IMG/VR virus record: IMGVR_UViG_3300017963_000188
Location: 1-64,000 of that record
Reading direction: 5' to 3' (one strand)
Length of the DNA stretch: 64,000 nucleotides
Shown: in pieces, positions 13,469 through 39,207 of the stretch
How positions within the stretch are numbered: position 1 is the first letter of the stretch
How the letters are laid out: every line of letters starts with the position of its first letter
Made by a program: the position numbers and the translations under genes
The notes under the pieces: model-generated
What the model saw: only the letters and a program-made list of their open reading frames with translations
Databases searched by the model: none
Told to the model about the DNA's origin: nothing

Positions 13469-14494
13469 ATGATAGAAAAGATATTCACATTGGAAACTAC
13501 TCAATATTCAACAGCACCTTCAATTTATTTGGCAGGACCTACATATAGAATTATTGATGGTGCAGAACCACCTATAGGGTGGAGAAATAAAGCATCACAG
13601 ATTCTTGAGTCGTGGGAAGGAGCTGTTTATATCCCTGAATGGAGAGGTGGGGTGAAGCCAGAGGGGTGGACTTATAGCAGGCAGGTGGATTGGGAAATGC
13701 AGGCTATGGAGAATGCCACAGTAATTTTGTTTTGGATACCAAGGGAACTTCCAGTTCTCCCAGCCTTTACCACCAATATAGAGTTTGGAGAATTTCTACA
13801 GACTGGAAAGATTGTGGTGGGAGCCCCTAAGGACGCTCCAAACAATCGTTATATATTTGAACGTTGTTCTAGAAGTAATGTCCCTACCAGCCATGACCTC
13901 GAAACTTGTGTGTTGCAAGCCATCAACTTGGTCAAGAGATTACGGGGAGAGATTGATACGGTACATTTCACTGCTGATACTCATTTCAATCATAAAAGAA
14001 CTCTAGAACTATCAAGACGACCATTTTCCAGTGTTCTAGAGATGAATTCTATGATGATTTACTACTGGAACGGGGTAGTATCTAGAAATGGTACTGTGTA
14101 TCATCTTGGTGATTTTGGTGACCCTTCATATATTGAACATCTGAATGGGAAAAAGATCTATATAGTTCCTGGAAACTATGACAAACCAGAGATCCTTGAA
14201 ACTTTGACCAAAGACCCAAGGGTAGAGATTCTTGGTCCACGTAGTTCTTACCATATCGATAACAACTACTTTACCTTGATTCATGCCCCTGAAGATGGGA
14301 AAGATGTGAATATGTTCTATCTCTATGGGCATATCCATAAGCTACAAATGGTGAAAATGAATGGACTCAACGTGGGGGTAGATTGTCACAACTTCACACC
14401 AATAGATGAAAATGAGGTGATGTTCTATCGAAGTGCTGTGATGCAACATTATGATGACAACGTGTTCACGCTAGGTATGGGGATGAACACTTAA
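13469..14494 (+). CDS. nucleoside 2-deoxyribosyltransferase-like domain fused to a calcineurin-like metallophosphoesterase
   Basis: N-terminal IYLAGP..WR..QVDWE..ATVILFWIP..TTNIEFG; C-terminal ADTHFNH, HLGDF, GNYD, YGHIH, NVGVD. Confidence 0.85.
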   Translation: MIEKIFTLETTQYSTAPSIYLAGPTYRIIDGAEPPIGWRNKASQILESWEGAVYIPEWRGGVKPEGWTYSRQVDWEMQAMENATVILFWIPRELPVLPAFTTNIEFGEFLQTGKIVVGAPKDAPNNRYIFERCSRSNVPTSHDLETCVLQAINLVKRLRGEIDTVHFTADTHFNHKRTLELSRRPFSSVLEMNSMMIYYWNGVVSRNGTVYHLGDFGDPSYIEHLNGKKIYIVPGNYDKPEILETLTKDPRVEILGPRSSYHIDNNYFTLIHAPEDGKDVNMFYLYGHIHKLQMVKMNGLNVGVDCHNFTPIDENEVMFYRSAVMQHYDDNVFTLGMGMNT

Positions 14495-14729: not shown

Positions 14730-15129
14730 ACAATTTCCGGTACGTCTCATTTGTTGTGGTGATGGGAACATTTCAAAAATCTATGTAGAAGAGAGGGGAA
14801 AAGTATCTGATCCTGAGACTCTAAAGGCACATGTTGAGAGATGGAAAGTGCTCTGGGAATGGGGAGAAGGGACTGAAGAAGAACAGCAACTAGCTTCAGG
14901 GAATTATGATCCAGAAAAGGTTTATGAGTGTTTTCGTAAACATTCAAGAACAACTCATTGTGGATGTACCACACCTTCCTGTCATGCCATGCACATTGTA
15001 CTTCCATTGATTTTTGTACCTTCATTCAATTTGAGTCAAAAATATGGGGTATGTTTTGACATAGCTTTTTTCAGAGTTCTAGAAGTTAAGGGGGCTATCA
15101 CAGATGATGACCGAGCAAACTTCTATTAA
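14719..15129 (+). CDS. hypothetical protein
   Basis: ORF in operon. Confidence 0.65.
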   Translation: MMIEQFPVRLICCGDGNISKIYVEERGKVSDPETLKAHVERWKVLWEWGEGTEEEQQLASGNYDPEKVYECFRKHSRTTHCGCTTPSCHAMHIVLPLIFVPSFNLSQKYGVCFDIAFFRVLEVKGAITDDDRANFY

Positions 15130-15156
15130 AAATCAAAACCAGTATAGTTCTATAGG
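15127..15156 (+). promoter_or_regulatory. probable promoter of the AAAAAT..AGTATAGTTCTAT class
   Basis: AGTATAGTTCTAT also occurs before the ORFs at 15443 and 20194. Confidence 0.55.
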
Positions 15157-15177
15157 GGGGAAATAAAGGAGTGGCTA

Positions 15178-15318
15178 ATGAAATTTTCGACCTATTCTTA
15201 CGGTGCTAGAGAACCAACAAATAAACCTATTGTTGAAGAGCAACTTTCTTTAGCCCATAAATATTACAATACACTGGTAGAGATTGAACTAGGAGGCTTA
15301 GTATTCATGACGCTATAG
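15178..15318 (+). pseudogene. truncated N-terminal fragment of a type V-M (Cas12m / V-U1) or TnpB-derived effector, fused to a CRISPR repeat
   Basis: AAGGAG RBS; translates MKFSTYSYGAREPTNKPIVEEQLSLAHKYYNTLVEIELGGLVFMTL*, matching my recollection of the Y.YG...P...EQL.LAH.Y.N.LVEIE start of V-U1 effectors; reading continues into repeat sequence. Confidence 0.6.
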
Positions 15319-15383
15319 AACACGGTATCAAGACCGTAGACGAAACTGTTGAAATGCCAGCATGGAGGCTTAGTATCCATGAC
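15292..15383 (+). CRISPR. minimal CRISPR array: partial repeat, 36-nt spacer, full 36-nt repeat
   Basis: full repeat GTTGAAATGCCAGCATGGAGGCTTAGTATCCATGAC (15348-15383) with CATGGA/TCCATG stem; 15292-15311 matches its last 20 nt at 19/20; spacer 15312-15347. Confidence 0.65.
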
Positions 15384-15442
15384 GTGGGCCTTGTGTAGTT
15401 ATGATTATGGACAACATAAAAATATAGAGTTAGTATAGTTCT

Positions 15443-15667
15443 ATGGGAGAAAATAAAAATGGGATATGCTGGGGAAAGACTTTGTTCATAATGGACTACA
15501 CAGTTTCAGTTCTGATTGTACCTGACTCTAGAGTAGACTCGTCTCAACTTGTAGAGACAATAAGATCTATAGCTGACGAACTTGGGTATGATGAATCATT
15601 GAAAAGTGACCCATTGTATTTGGCACGGCACATTCGAGGTAGATGTCTATACGAACTAGGAGAATGA
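15443..15667 (+). CDS. hypothetical protein (start uncertain)
   Basis: ORF downstream of an AGTATAGTTCTAT motif. Confidence 0.5.
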   Translation: MGENKNGICWGKTLFIMDYTVSVLIVPDSRVDSSQLVETIRSIADELGYDESLKSDPLYLARHIRGRCLYELGE

Positions 15668-15668
15668 G

Positions 15669-16046
15669 ATGCACAAAGTTGAAGTGACGGTACACAAAGA
15701 CATTCTGGTAATCACAACCAATGATGAAGTGGAGTGTGAAGGTTGGGTCCCAGCAGGTGACGGGAAGATTGGATGTGTACTGATCGACACTAAGGGGAAG
15801 CTAGGTATCAGTGAAGAAGCTCTGGCTTGGCTCAAGAGTGTGGAAAAGAGCTGTGATGCTATCGGAGATGTAGATGCATGGAAATCTGATGATGGACCAT
15901 GCTTCTCATGGCTGGGAGGCCCAAATTCGTTAAAGCAAAGAGGCTGCACTGGAAGTAGGGGGTATAATACATCCTGTCTCGAATATGACATCATCCCCAA
16001 TCAAGTTCCTGAAGAGGCTGTGAAAGTTATTGAGGAGAATACATGA
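15669..16046 (+). CDS. hypothetical protein
   Basis: AGGAG RBS. Confidence 0.7.
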   Translation: MHKVEVTVHKDILVITTNDEVECEGWVPAGDGKIGCVLIDTKGKLGISEEALAWLKSVEKSCDAIGDVDAWKSDDGPCFSWLGGPNSLKQRGCTGSRGYNTSCLEYDIIPNQVPEEAVKVIEENT

Positions 16047-22339: not shown

Positions 22340-23274
22340 ATGACCAAAAAGACAGAAGAGAAAAGATGGGATGCAATGATACCTTCTTATGAAGACACTG
22401 AAGGTGGAGGACAAAAATCTGATATACAAATTGTTAATCAGTCTGATGGTTCAAAACTTTACCCCTTGGATATCCGTGTTAGACCAGCTTTTTCTTTAGA
22501 TGAATTAGCTGCTGGCAAAGTAAACAAAGCTAAATATACACATTATTGTTTGTTTGATGGTGTTGAGTTTCTACATAAAAACAAAGAGAGTGATAAAGGT
22601 ACTGATGAAGACATTGGGAGACTTTTAAATTTTGAAATTGGAAATACTATAGAATATATGCTTTTATCTACGATAGAATTCATAGAAGATTCTTGTCAAA
22701 GAGAATTAAACCAAGTGCTGTCATTTAAAGATTCTGAAGTGGGAAAAGGAGTAGCTTCATATCTGGAGGGGGTGGAAATCTTAGTGAGAAGCCATTTTGA
22801 TAATTCCCCACAGCTTGTAGATCTTATGGATATGACGAAAGCTGTCTTACATAATCCGGCATTATCACAAATAGTTAAGCTCATTCATTTTGCTGGGTTT
22901 CAACCAAATATCTTGGTGAGGTAGAAGAACTATTTGATGTCAATGTGAAGAGACTCAAGGCACGGATCAGTAAAAGTCATGGTACAAAAAAAGTGAAGCT
23001 CCAAAAGAAGCTGGAGCAAATGAACCCTGAACAAATCTTATTGTTGGGTCGTTCAATTCAGGTGATGAAAACCATAGGGTCTTCAGAAGAAGGGGATGAT
23101 TCGGGACCCAAGCTCAAATATCGTTTATTAGTGGCAGGTCATTGGAAGAATCAAGTCTGTGGACCACAAAGGTCGGAAAGAAAACGTATCTTCATAGAAC
23201 CCTATTGGAAAGGTCCAGGGGAGGCTATTGAAGTGAATAAAGACCATAGTATAGAATTAGGAGAAATGAAATGA
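22340..23274 (+). pseudogene. frameshift-split homolog of the VxGHW...PYWKGP protein at 62328-63581
   Basis: ORFs 22340-22924 and 22945-23274 join by a -1 shift at the T4 run 22888-22891; C-terminal LVAGHWKNQVCGP..RIFIEPYWKGP. Confidence 0.5.
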
Positions 23275-38280: not shown

Positions 38281-39207
38281 TTAGACACGATTCTTAGGCT
38301 GGGAAGTCTGGTAGATGTTAGACATCATATACATGTCACGGTTCTGCTTCTTCAGACGCTCGATTTCAGCATCCTTTTCTTTGATGATCTGGTCTTTCTC
38401 TTTTGATTCCTTACCCATCTCGTAGACTTGATTCAGAACAGCAGCCATATCACAACCCTGGCTTTTCTCTGACATTTCAGCTTTGACCAGACCAACCTGG
38501 ATCTCGACCATTGCCTGGGTCAGCCAACGACGGAACATTGGAGCCCTCTTCATGGTGGAAGTGCTGCAAATTTCAATGGCACCGACCAGGTTGAATCCGA
38601 CCACGTTACGTTCTTTACCATCCTTTGTGATGGTAGGGACCAGACAACTGTAACCTTCCAGTTTCTGACGAGTCACGATATTTGAAATACTCCGCTTCGG
38701 GTCTTTGTATCCCAACGCTTTCCCGAGCTGTTCACGAGTCACGATGGGATTTTGATTCTCAGCATACATACAGATGCTGTGATTGCCATACATCTTGGTG
38801 CCTGCCAGAGAATATCCGTTGGTAGGGACCAGATCGGTAACCACTTCTGCCTCAACAACCTCAGGCTCAACAACCTCAGGCTCAACAACCTCAGGCTCAA
38901 CAACCTCAGGTTTGGGCATAGGTTCGGGTTTGGATTCAGGTTTGGGCTCAGGTTTGGACAGATAGTTCTCCTCGAACACCATCATATCATCAGCGATGGA
39001 TTCGGTTTTGTGAGCCAGCTTCTTTCCGAACTTATCCACCATCTCACAGACCCCTTCCATGGACACAACCCTCTCCCCTGCATCTTTCCAGACACATTCA
39101 GGAGAGAGCTTCTGAGCTACTGTGGTCGGTGAATAGGTGGAACCGATAGCTTTGATGAGATTCTTCAGGTTGACTACCACGAATCCTCTTGAGACTTGAA
39201 ATTTCAT
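38281..39207 (-). CDS. Bro-N-like DNA-binding protein with a PEVVE repeat linker
   Basis: IVTREQLGKALGYKDPKRSISNI..FNLVGAIEICSTS..APMFRRWL. Confidence 0.6.
   Translation of the reverse strand: MKFQVSRGFVVVNLKNLIKAIGSTYSPTTVAQKLSPECVWKDAGERVVSMEGVCEMVDKFGKKLAHKTESIADDMMVFEENYLSKPEPKPESKPEPMPKPEVVEPEVVEPEVVEPEVVEAEVVTDLVPTNGYSLAGTKMYGNHSICMYAENQNPIVTREQLGKALGYKDPKRSISNIVTRQKLEGYSCLVPTITKDGKERNVVGFNLVGAIEICSTSTMKRAPMFRRWLTQAMVEIQVGLVKAEMSEKSQGCDMAAVLNQVYEMGKESKEKDQIIKEKDAEIERLKKQNRDMYMMSNIYQTSQPKNRV
38851..38910. repeat. 15-bp exact tandem repeat x4 (in-frame PEVVE)
   Basis: ctcaacaacctcagg x4. Confidence 0.9.

What the first reader, a model, noticed from the sequence alone, without database searches (positions are those of the whole stretch)
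15127..15420. Collapsed type V-M (Cas12m-like) CRISPR locus: effector 5' end fused directly to a mini-array
Seen: promoter motif and AAGGAG RBS, then MKFSTYSYGAREPTNKPIVEEQLSLAHKYYNTLVEIE. The frame then runs into the last 20 nt of a repeat, followed by a 36-nt spacer and a full 36-nt repeat, GTTGAAATGCCAG-CATGGA-GGCTTAGTA-TCCATG-AC. From memory: V-U1/Cas12m effectors begin Y.YG...P...EQL.LAH...N.LV.(I/L)E, and the Mycolicibacterium Cas12m repeat has the same 36-nt layout (..CCAG, 6-bp stem, AC 3' end). Inference: a phage-borne Cas12m-like silencing system lost nearly its whole effector gene through one deletion, possibly at GGAGG microhomology, while keeping the promoter and array. The ORF track misses it because it has only 46 codons.
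Basis: partly seen in the sequence, partly recalled or inferred. Interest (0 to 1): 0.9.

Follow-up and report, generated by a model that had tools for sequence, protein, structure and literature searches.

The report
Decayed phage Cas12m CRISPR locus remnant
A 358-kb phage carries the leftover of a Cas12m (type V-M) CRISPR system: the first 38 codons of the effector gene joined to a broken repeat, one spacer and one intact repeat, which most likely can no longer target anything.

Summary
The 46-codon ORF (15178-15318) starts with 37-38 residues that match the N-terminus of a Cas12m family. It scores 67 bits (E 1e-18) against an N-terminal profile built without it, whereas the best of 20,000 shuffles scores 12 bits. 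That family matches solved Cas12m structures over its full length (E 4e-159). The ORF runs into the last 20 nt of a repeat, then a 36-nt spacer, then a complete 36-nt repeat. A covariance model built from 26 repeats next to Cas12m genes elsewhere finds exactly one hit in the 64-kb window, this repeat (42 bits, E 1e-7). Intact relatives have cas12m followed by the array on the same strand, so one internal deletion explains the structure. The remnant is probably dead as a targeting device. The only spacer has lost the pseudoknot strand and half the stem of its 5' scaffold. Two motif scans found no second family-type cas12m on the 358-kb contig. No identical repeat or spacer target was found anywhere searched. 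The junction is identical in at least four assemblies, all 100% identical, so there is no evolutionary depth. A decoy-RNA (Racr-like) role for the intact repeat is not excluded. Interest is moderate.

The parts
15141..15156 (+). Phage promoter-like motif AGTATAGTTCTATAGG, the regulatory cassette this phage uses upstream of several genes
   Evidence: There are 9 matches with up to 3 mismatches in the window against 1.05 expected. Exact copies lie at 15141, 15432 and 20169. Each is followed by a purine-rich RBS-like stretch and a start codon.
15166..15171 (+). Ribosome-binding site AAGGAG, 6 nt before the ATG
   Evidence: Read directly from the sequence.
15178..15291 (+). cas12m 5' stub: codons 1-38, the N-terminal WED-domain segment of a Cas12m-family effector
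   Evidence: The stub scores 67 bits (E 1e-18) against the family N-terminal HMM, and the best of 20,000 shuffles scores 12 bits. The full-family HMM aligns residues 1-38 to profile positions 1-39. It is 45-67% identical to residues 1-40 of more than 50 homologues. The family matches Cas12m structures in the PDB at E 4e-159.
15178..15318 (+). 46-codon fusion ORF. The last 8 codons plus the stop are read from the repeat remnant and the spacer. There is no evidence of a function of its own.
   Evidence: no Pfam hit; no other short protein like it among 5.8 billion sequences.
15289..15297 (.). Deletion junction interval
   Evidence: Family position 38 is R in 55 and L in 9 of 71 members. Position 39 is most often G. 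Position 40 is R in 66 of 71. The window has L38, G39, G40, and repeat identity starts at 15292.
15292..15311 (+). Truncated repeat: positions -20 to -1 only, with one substitution (T15305). It lacks the GCC pseudoknot strand, the G of the G:A pair and 3 nt of the 5' stem arm.
   Evidence: The covariance model does not detect it even at E 10. The scaffold requirements come from PMC10442227.
15312..15347 (+). Single 36-nt spacer, orphaned because its 5' scaffold is broken. No target was found.
   Evidence: No match in the window with up to 3 mismatches. No match in IMG/VR for the first 24 nt. Only chance-level hits in GenBank phages. None in plasmids or in the 121 fetched loci.
15348..15383 (+). 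Intact 36-nt type V-M repeat: GCC/GGC helix, 6-bp helix CATGGA/TCCATG, G...A pair and AC 3' end
   Evidence: This is the only hit in the 64-kb window of covariance model R1, which was built from 26 foreign Cas12m-associated repeats (42.3 bits, E 1.2e-7). Covariation supports both helices: 9 of 9 pairs show double changes, 90% of cells are paired, and 0 of 500 shuffles reach this.

Best explanation

**Ancestral state (inferred).** The phage had the canonical arrangement: its own promoter and RBS, a cas12m gene of about 1.7-1.9 kb, a short gap, and a CRISPR array of 36-nt repeats on the same strand.

**The event (inferred).** A single deletion of at least about 1.7 kb joined codon 38/39 of cas12m to position -20 of an internal repeat.

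**What remains (shown).** A promoter-like motif, an RBS, a 38-codon effector stub, a 20-nt repeat tail, one spacer and one complete terminal repeat.

**Present activity (inferred).** The region is probably still transcribed from the retained phage promoter, reading through into the next gene, but it cannot carry out RNA-guided silencing by itself. There is no effector. In type V systems the scaffold lies 5' of the guide, and the only spacer's scaffold has lost the pseudoknot strand and half the stem. The stub and the repeat are undecayed, so the deletion is probably recent.
For: **Identity of the stub:**

**Identity of the repeat:**, plus the published Cas12m2 crRNA structure (PMC10442227). 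That structure has a 36-nt scaffold, a pseudoknot plus stem, a G:A pair and a base-specifically read C(-1). Its 5' 7 nt are disordered.

**Canonical gene order.** cas12m is followed by an array on the same strand in about 25 viral loci, and in GenBank virus Rctr197k.

**No other Cas12m sequence nearby.**
- There is no other Cas12m fragment anywhere in the window.
- Neither an N-terminal nor a C-terminal motif scan of IMG/VR hits the 358-kb contig except at the stub.

**The junction is not an assembly error.** It is identical in contigs from at least four assemblies: JGI 3300017963 and 3300028840, ENA ERZ27256798 and Logan SRR6963591.

**Long residence in the phage lineage.** The stub has 33% GC and carries the phage's own promoter-like motif. 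Most family loci sampled here sit in 55-70% GC DNA.

**A similar case elsewhere.** Viral contig L043 also carries an N-terminal Cas12m stub with a solitary repeat, so such decay recurs.
Against: - No intact allele was found, because this phage has no relatives in the collections. The upstream neighbour gene is an ORFan among 5.8 billion proteins. The deletion is therefore inferred, not observed.
- The retained repeat scores higher against the family model (42 bits) than the real array repeats scored in five other loci (17-36 bits). The stub also keeps every near-invariant family residue. Both facts fit a very recent deletion, but they equally fit selection on the remnant.
- About 294 kb of the phage genome could not be read, and only motif scans cover it. 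A divergent Cas12 there is not excluded.
- All available copies are 100% identical, so neither conservation nor decay can be measured.
Confidence: 0.75

Rival explanations
1. Exapted RNA decoy (Racr-like solitary repeat unit). The intact repeat is transcribed from the retained phage promoter and binds Cas12m made by the host or by a co-infecting phage. It titrates the effector into unproductive complexes and so protects this phage from Cas12m silencing.
For: - The structure is a solitary, structurally perfect repeat with no cas gene, 207 nt downstream of a promoter-like motif. This matches the description of viral SRUs and Racrs (PMC10651486).
- Two other large viral contigs from the same sample carry intact Cas12m with arrays of 11 and 18 repeats: 3300017963_000003 (192 kb) and 3300017963_000200 (147 kb). 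Cas12m-armed competitors therefore co-occur with this phage.
- The repeat shows no decay.
- A second stub-plus-solitary-repeat locus exists in L043.
Against: - No CRISPR array with the same or a nearly identical repeat was found in 185,579 species genomes, JGI metagenome contigs or IMG/VR. The closest repeat is 28/36 identical.
- The same-sample phages use different stem sequences.
- No reproducible acr gene lies nearby. The precomputed weak AcrVA2-like hit was not reproduced.
- A recent deletion explains the lack of decay equally well.
- Racrs have been validated for types I-C, I-E, I-F and V-A, not for V-M.
Confidence: 0.12
2. Working mini-array serviced in trans. The spacer is still used as a guide by a Cas12m encoded elsewhere, on the unread part of the phage genome, in the host or in a co-infecting phage. 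The target would be a competitor phage or a host gene.
For: - Virus-borne mini-arrays without cas genes are a known category. This rests on my own knowledge of the literature and was not checked here.
- Promoter, spacer and terminal repeat are all present.
Against: - In type V-M the scaffold lies 5' of the guide and needs roughly positions -29 to -1 (PMC10442227). The spacer's upstream repeat keeps only -20 to -1, and the model does not recognise it.
- No protospacer was found.
- No cognate effector or array was found.
Confidence: 0.05
3. Assembly artefact. A mis-join inside a metagenome assembly created the apparent fusion.
For: The window comes from a metagenome assembly, and CRISPR arrays are prone to mis-assembly. 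For example, L003 ends in four identical repeat-spacer units.
Against: The same junction, within 4-20 kb of 100% identical flanks, appears in contigs from independent assemblers and archives: JGI (two samples), ENA and Logan. The possible overlap at the junction is at most 3-5 nt, far below any assembler k-mer.
Confidence: 0.02

Closest known systems
Type V-M CRISPR-Cas12m systems (MmCas12m, TtCas12m2, GoCas12m): RNA-guided DNA binders that silence rather than cut
   Same: - The stub is homologous to the Cas12m N-terminus.
- The repeat is 36 nt with the pseudoknot-plus-stem architecture, the G:A pair and the AC 3' end described for Cas12m2 crRNA.
- The array lies downstream of the effector on the same strand.
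   Different: About 94% of the effector is missing: REC, RuvC and TNB are all gone. Only one spacer and 1.6 repeats remain, so the remnant cannot work as a V-M system.
Phage-borne Cas12m loci: myxophage MV-1 (bioRxiv 10.64898/2026.09.14.751636) and GenBank virus Rctr197k (KX853510.1, gene annotated 'similar to transposase' next to an annotated CRISPR)
   Same: The effector family, the repeat family and the viral carrier are the same. Adaptation genes are reported absent in MV-1. The IMG/VR scans found 33-66 further viral contigs with such loci.
   Different: Those loci are intact, with a full effector and arrays of 8-20 or more repeats. The window holds a collapsed version in a much larger (358 kb), AT-richer phage.
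Viral solitary repeat units and RNA anti-CRISPRs (Racrs; Camara-Wilpert et al. 2023, PMC10651486)
   Same: A single intact CRISPR-type repeat in a phage, downstream of a promoter-like element, with no cas gene alongside.
   Different: - The repeat's origin by collapse of the phage's own CRISPR locus is visible here, because the effector stub and a spacer are still attached.
- No cognate host system was found.
- Racr activity has not been shown for type V-M.
CRISPR-Cas systems of huge phages (e.g. CasPhi/Cas12j) and virus-borne mini-arrays
   Same: A compact type V system without adaptation genes carried by a very large phage. The repeat has a hairpin close to its 3' end.
   Different: The effector family is Cas12m. 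CasPhi matches the family profile only weakly and only in the C-terminal RuvC/TNB region (E 1e-6 to 7.5e-5). The locus here is non-functional.

Membership tests
Type V-M CRISPR-Cas (Cas12m) | A full-length effector of about 550-650 aa with WED, REC, RuvC and TNB (zinc-finger) domains | tested here: not met
   Only codons 1-38 are present. tblastn with 93 family proteins and the full-family HMM find no other piece in the window.
Type V-M CRISPR-Cas (Cas12m) | Sequence homology of the coding remnant to Cas12m | tested here: met
   The remnant scores 67 bits (E 1e-18) against the N-terminal profile. The family profile matches Cas12m structures at E 4e-159 (23vw), 1.5e-89 (Cas12m2 8hio), 1.8e-80 (8pm4, deposited as 'Transposase') and 1.9e-58 (UnCas12m4a). 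TnpB and Cas12f match only in the C-terminal region, at E 6e-14 or weaker.
Type V-M CRISPR-Cas (Cas12m) | A 36-nt repeat whose RNA forms a pseudoknot plus stem scaffold, with a G:A pair and a C at position -1 | tested here: met
   Covariance model R1 scores the repeat at 42.3 bits, E 1.2e-7. Both helices covary across 19 loci and the window repeat fits both. The architecture is as described in PMC10442227.
Type V-M CRISPR-Cas (Cas12m) | An array adjacent to the effector on the same strand, downstream of it | tested here: met
   A remnant array (20-nt repeat tail, spacer, repeat) directly follows the stub on the + strand. About 25 intact loci show the same order.
Type V-M CRISPR-Cas (Cas12m) | PAM-dependent DNA binding and transcriptional silencing | not testable with these tools
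   This needs biochemistry, and there is no effector here in any case.
Solitary repeat unit / RNA anti-CRISPR (Racr) | A CRISPR-type repeat in a mobile element that is not associated with cas genes | tested here: met
   There is one intact repeat. No intact cas12m is present in the window, and motif scans find none on the contig.
Solitary repeat unit / RNA anti-CRISPR (Racr) | A promoter within about 250 bp upstream | tested here: inconclusive
   The recurrent phage motif at 15141 lies 207 nt upstream. The generic sigma-70 scan is no better than shuffles. No transcription data are available.
Solitary repeat unit / RNA anti-CRISPR (Racr) | Close mimicry of the repeat of a CRISPR-Cas system that the element encounters | tested here: not met
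   No array with this repeat was found in genome, metagenome or viral collections. The best match is 28/36 (Schlesneria). The repeats of the same-sample phages have different stems.
Solitary repeat unit / RNA anti-CRISPR (Racr) | Inhibition of the cognate Cas effector | not testable with these tools
   This needs an interference assay.
Functional virus-borne mini-CRISPR array | At least one spacer preceded by a complete repeat scaffold | tested here: not met
   The upstream repeat keeps only positions -20 to -1 and the model does not detect it.
Functional virus-borne mini-CRISPR array | The spacer matches a target, typically a related virus | tested here: not met
   No protospacer was found.

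The most novel reading that the evidence does not exclude
The collapsed locus is not junk. It would be a newly born RNA anti-CRISPR: the intact V-M repeat, still driven by the former cas12m promoter, acts as a decoy for Cas12m effectors carried by competing huge phages in the same community. That would show a direct evolutionary route from a phage's own CRISPR locus to a Racr, and would be the first Racr against a DNA-binding (non-cutting) type V-M system.
Probability: 0.12. Interest if true: 0.65.

Novelty: new member of a known kind. Interest (0 to 1): 0.35.

Why it matters
The locus is a clean molecular fossil. It shows that a very large phage once carried, and then lost, a Cas12m silencing system, so these systems are gained and lost in phage genomes.

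It also shows how a solitary repeat under a promoter can arise by a single deletion. That is a plausible origin for the solitary repeat units that some phages use as RNA anti-CRISPRs.

The by-product may matter more than the relic. Cas12m genes with arrays were found on dozens of IMG/VR viral contigs, many longer than 100 kb. A motif scan of 185,579 species-representative genomes found only six loci. A 2026 preprint still describes a phage Cas12m as the first of its kind.

Tried and rejected
**Direct database hits for the 46-aa peptide.**
- Pfam, NCBIfam and the PDB gave nothing.
- tblastn against plasmids gave nothing.
- Of the whole-library phmmer hits, P0002, P0003 and P0005 are repetitive proteins and were discarded as spurious.

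**Close relatives of the phage.**
- A megablast of 5 kb against GenBank phages found nothing.
- The upstream neighbour gene is an ORFan.
- The test for an intact allele in a relative therefore could not be done.

**Exact or degenerate scans for the window's own repeat.** IMG/VR, genomes and metagenomes returned only the source contig.

**Spacer targets.** None was found. The 17-18-nt matches between the fetched loci and the window, including one that overlaps the L030 array, are short matches I treated as chance.

**The sequence after the last repeat as a guide.** It has no second match in the window.

**Other checks that gave nothing.**
- Rfam has no match in 14900-15800.
- No other short stub-like proteins share words with the peptide.
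- A solitary repeat upstream of intact cas12m genes is not a general feature.
- P0004 sits on a 714-bp contig and says nothing about context.
- L044 looked truncated but is simply cut by the end of its contig.
- Four single matches to the family repeat pattern (L009, L010, L011, L014) have no stem and were treated as chance.
- The precomputed weak AcrVA2-like hit was not reproduced.

Full report
**What is there.** On the + strand the sequence reads as follows.
- A 16-nt motif, AGTATAGTTCTATAGG, lies at 15141-15156.
- AAGGAG lies at 15166-15171.
- An ATG at 15178 opens a 46-codon ORF that ends at 15318.
- From 15292 the ORF is made of the last 20 nt of a repeat (15292-15311).
- A 36-nt unique segment follows (15312-15347).
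- A complete 36-nt repeat follows that (15348-15383).

The partial and complete copies agree at 19 of 20 positions and lie exactly 72 nt apart. Chance expectation for the pair is about 0.02. The complete repeat is unique in the 64-kb window.

**Where the window comes from.** The repeat retrieves IMGVR_UViG_3300017963_000188, a 358,038-bp viral contig identical to the window. It is also held as Ga0180437_10000024. The window encodes Ant/Bro-N antirepressors, D5-like regulators, a T4-type RNA ligase and many ORFans. It has no near relative among GenBank phages. GC content is 41%.

**The peptide is the N-terminus of a Cas12m.** Curated libraries and the PDB gave nothing for the 46-aa peptide itself.
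- A phmmer search of 1.84 billion representatives gave one genuine relative, P0004 (67% identity over residues 5-37, E 9e-5). The other hits are repetitive proteins.
- An alignment of the peptide with P0004 retrieved viral contig L003. It holds a 627-aa ORF whose N-terminus is 62% identical to peptide residues 10-37.
- That protein matches solved Cas12m structures: 23vw at E 4e-51 and Cas12m2 8hio at E 2e-23.
- It has 92 homologues in the large protein collection.
- The peptide aligns to residues 1-40 of more than 50 of those homologues at 45-67% identity.
- An HMM of the first 45 residues of 36 family members, built without the peptide, scores it at 67 bits (E 1e-18). The best of 20,000 shuffles reaches 12 bits, and no other ORF of the window matches.
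- The family profile matches Cas12m structures end to end (E 4e-159, 1.5e-89, 1.8e-80, 1.9e-58). It matches TnpB and Cas12f only in the C-terminal RuvC/TNB part.

**The repeat is a type V-M repeat.**
- The array downstream of the L003 gene has a 36-nt repeat that is 26/36 identical to the window's. Its stem differences are compensatory: CATGGA/TCCATG becomes CGCGGA/TCTGCG.
- The same holds for L008 and for about 25 further viral loci.
- In an alignment of 19 such repeats, two helices covary: a 6-bp helix (columns 14-19 with 30-35) and a 3-bp helix between GCC and the GGC inside the loop. All 9 pairs show changes on both sides, and 90% of cells are paired against 64% in shuffles. No shuffle out of 500 reaches the observed covariation score, and slid registers fall to 30-44% paired.
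- This matches the Cas12m2 crRNA structure. It has a 36-nt repeat-derived scaffold, a pseudoknot plus stem, a G:A pair closing the helix and a base-specifically read C(-1). Its first 7 nt are disordered (PMC10442227). Bigelyte et al. likewise describe two stems in V-M repeats (PMC11013384).
- A covariance model built from 26 foreign repeats finds one hit in the whole window, on either strand: 15348-15383, at 42.3 bits and E 1.2e-7. The truncated copy is not detected even at E 10.
- Rfam has no match.

**How the structure arose (inference).** In intact relatives the order is cas12m, then 50-300 nt, then the array, all on one strand. A single deletion from just after codon 38 to position -20 of an internal repeat gives exactly the observed structure. 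It would remove at least about 1.7 kb.

The junction can be bracketed. Family position 38 is R or L, position 39 is most often G, and position 40 is R in 66 of 71 members. The window has L, G, G, and repeat identity starts at 15292. The join therefore lies within 15289-15297, and shared bases can be at most GGA.

No other Cas12m fragment exists in the window. The stub has 33% GC and sits behind a motif that this phage uses upstream of at least six genes. Most family loci sampled here lie in 55-70% GC DNA. This suggests the gene had been resident in the phage lineage for a long time.

**Is it real?** The exact 46-aa product is called on 7 contigs from JGI (two samples), ENA and Logan assemblies. 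The three loci I fetched are 100% identical to the window over 4-20 kb. That rules out a mis-join. It also means there is no sequence divergence from which to judge selection.

**What it can still do.** In type V-M the scaffold precedes the guide and needs roughly positions -29 to -1. The only spacer (15312-15347) is preceded by positions -20 to -1 only. The GCC strand, the G of the G:A pair and three of the six 5' stem bases are gone, and a further stem pair has become G:U. The spacer is effectively orphaned.

No protospacer was found in any of these:
- the window;
- IMG/VR;
- GenBank phages;
- plasmids;
- the 121 fetched loci.

The intact terminal repeat is followed by flanking DNA that matches nothing else in the window.

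No cas12m of this family lies elsewhere on the 358-kb contig. An N-terminal motif scan hits only the stub, and a C-terminal motif scan (66 viral loci) does not hit the contig. No array with this repeat exists in 185,579 species genomes, JGI metagenome contigs or IMG/VR. The closest repeat is 28/36 identical, in Schlesneria. No terminator is predicted between the stub and the next gene.

My best reading is a transcribed but functionless relic of a recent deletion (confidence 0.75).

**The rival worth keeping.** A solitary intact repeat behind a promoter, with no cas gene, is what viral solitary repeat units look like. Some of these act as RNA anti-CRISPRs (PMC10651486).

In favour:
- The retained repeat fits the family model better (42 bits) than the array repeats I scored in five other loci (17-36 bits).
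- Two other large viral contigs from the same sample carry intact Cas12m with 11- and 18-repeat arrays.
- A second viral contig, L043, also has an N-terminal stub next to a solitary repeat.

Against:
- No cognate array was found.
- The stems of the co-occurring phages' repeats differ from the window's.
- No acr gene nearby could be confirmed.
- Lack of decay is expected after a recent deletion.

I give this rival 0.12.

**Comparison with what is known.** The parts belong to type V-M by homology (stub) and by structure (repeat), but the locus fails the defining requirement of an effector. It is a pseudogenised member, not a working one.

Phage-borne Cas12m was called a first in a September 2026 preprint. 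GenBank virus Rctr197k already carries one, annotated 'similar to transposase', next to an annotated CRISPR. My scans found 33-66 IMG/VR contigs with such loci.

**Limits.**
- About 294 kb of the phage could not be read.
- The host is unknown.
- No expression data exist.

Noticed in passing
L043:3858-4474 (IMGVR_UViG_3300021178_000012, 83.6 kb): A second collapsed Cas12m locus in an unrelated viral contig. An ORF keeps only about the first 145 residues of Cas12m. The only V-M repeat in the 8.4-kb locus (35 bits, E 7e-7) lies 107 nt upstream on the opposite strand. No other Cas12m piece lies within 4 kb on either side.
   Followed up: partly
L016:5758-7092 (IMGVR_UViG_3300024243_000005, 180 kb); the same in L015 and L019: An intact Cas12m is followed by at least 24 scaffold units at a period of about 47 nt instead of about 72 nt. 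Each unit has a core of about 28 nt (GCC...GAC) and about 19-20 variable nt. The units differ from one another by compensatory stem changes. This is a condensed, heterogeneous array unlike ordinary CRISPR arrays.
   Followed up: partly
Loci L015-L047 and L055-L120 (IMG/VR) compared with L049-L054 (genomes): Cas12m-family genes, most with arrays directly downstream, occur on 33 viral contigs by the N-terminal motif scan and on 66 by the C-terminal motif scan. Many of these contigs are 100-230 kb long. A near-identical N-terminal motif scan of 185,579 species genomes gave only 6 loci (Gemmatimonadales, Polyangiaceae, Sorangium, Schlesneria and a deltaproteobacterium). This clade seems to be mainly virus- or mobile-element-borne.
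   Followed up: partly
L036 / L071 (IMGVR_UViG_3300017963_000003, 192 kb) and L089 (IMGVR_UViG_3300017963_000200, 147 kb): Two other large viral contigs from the same sample as the window carry intact Cas12m genes with 18- and 11-repeat arrays. Their repeat stems differ from the window's. None of their spacers matches the 64-kb window.
   Followed up: partly
L122:3414-6830 (GenBank KX853510.1, Virus Rctr197k): A deposited 197-kb virus genome has an unrecognised Cas12m-like gene, annotated 'similar to transposase', followed by an annotated 1.5-kb CRISPR whose repeats fit the V-M model weakly (17.9-19.4 bits).
   Followed up: partly
window 4054, 6042, 7814, 15141, 15432, 20169, 25789 (+ strand): A recurrent, partly palindromic motif RGTATAGWTCTATAGG is usually preceded by an A-rich stretch and followed by AGGAGG and a start codon. 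It is probably a phage-specific promoter or operator for this block of small genes.
   Followed up: partly
window 13469-14494 (+): A 341-aa protein fuses a nucleoside 2-deoxyribosyltransferase-like domain (E 4e-12) to a calcineurin-like metallophosphoesterase domain (E 2e-7).
   Followed up: no
window 23020-23274 (+): An 84-aa gene carries a precomputed 'weak' AcrVA2-like Pfam hit in the contig index. My own Pfam scan at E up to 0.01 did not reproduce it.
   Followed up: yes
L003:7913-8185: The array at the end of this contig consists of four identical repeat-spacer units of 73 nt. This is probably an assembly collapse or loop at the contig end rather than true duplicate spacers.
   Followed up: no
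window 38851-38910 (- strand ORF 38281-39207): A perfect 15-nt tandem repeat in 4 copies lies inside a Bro-N domain protein gene.
   Followed up: no
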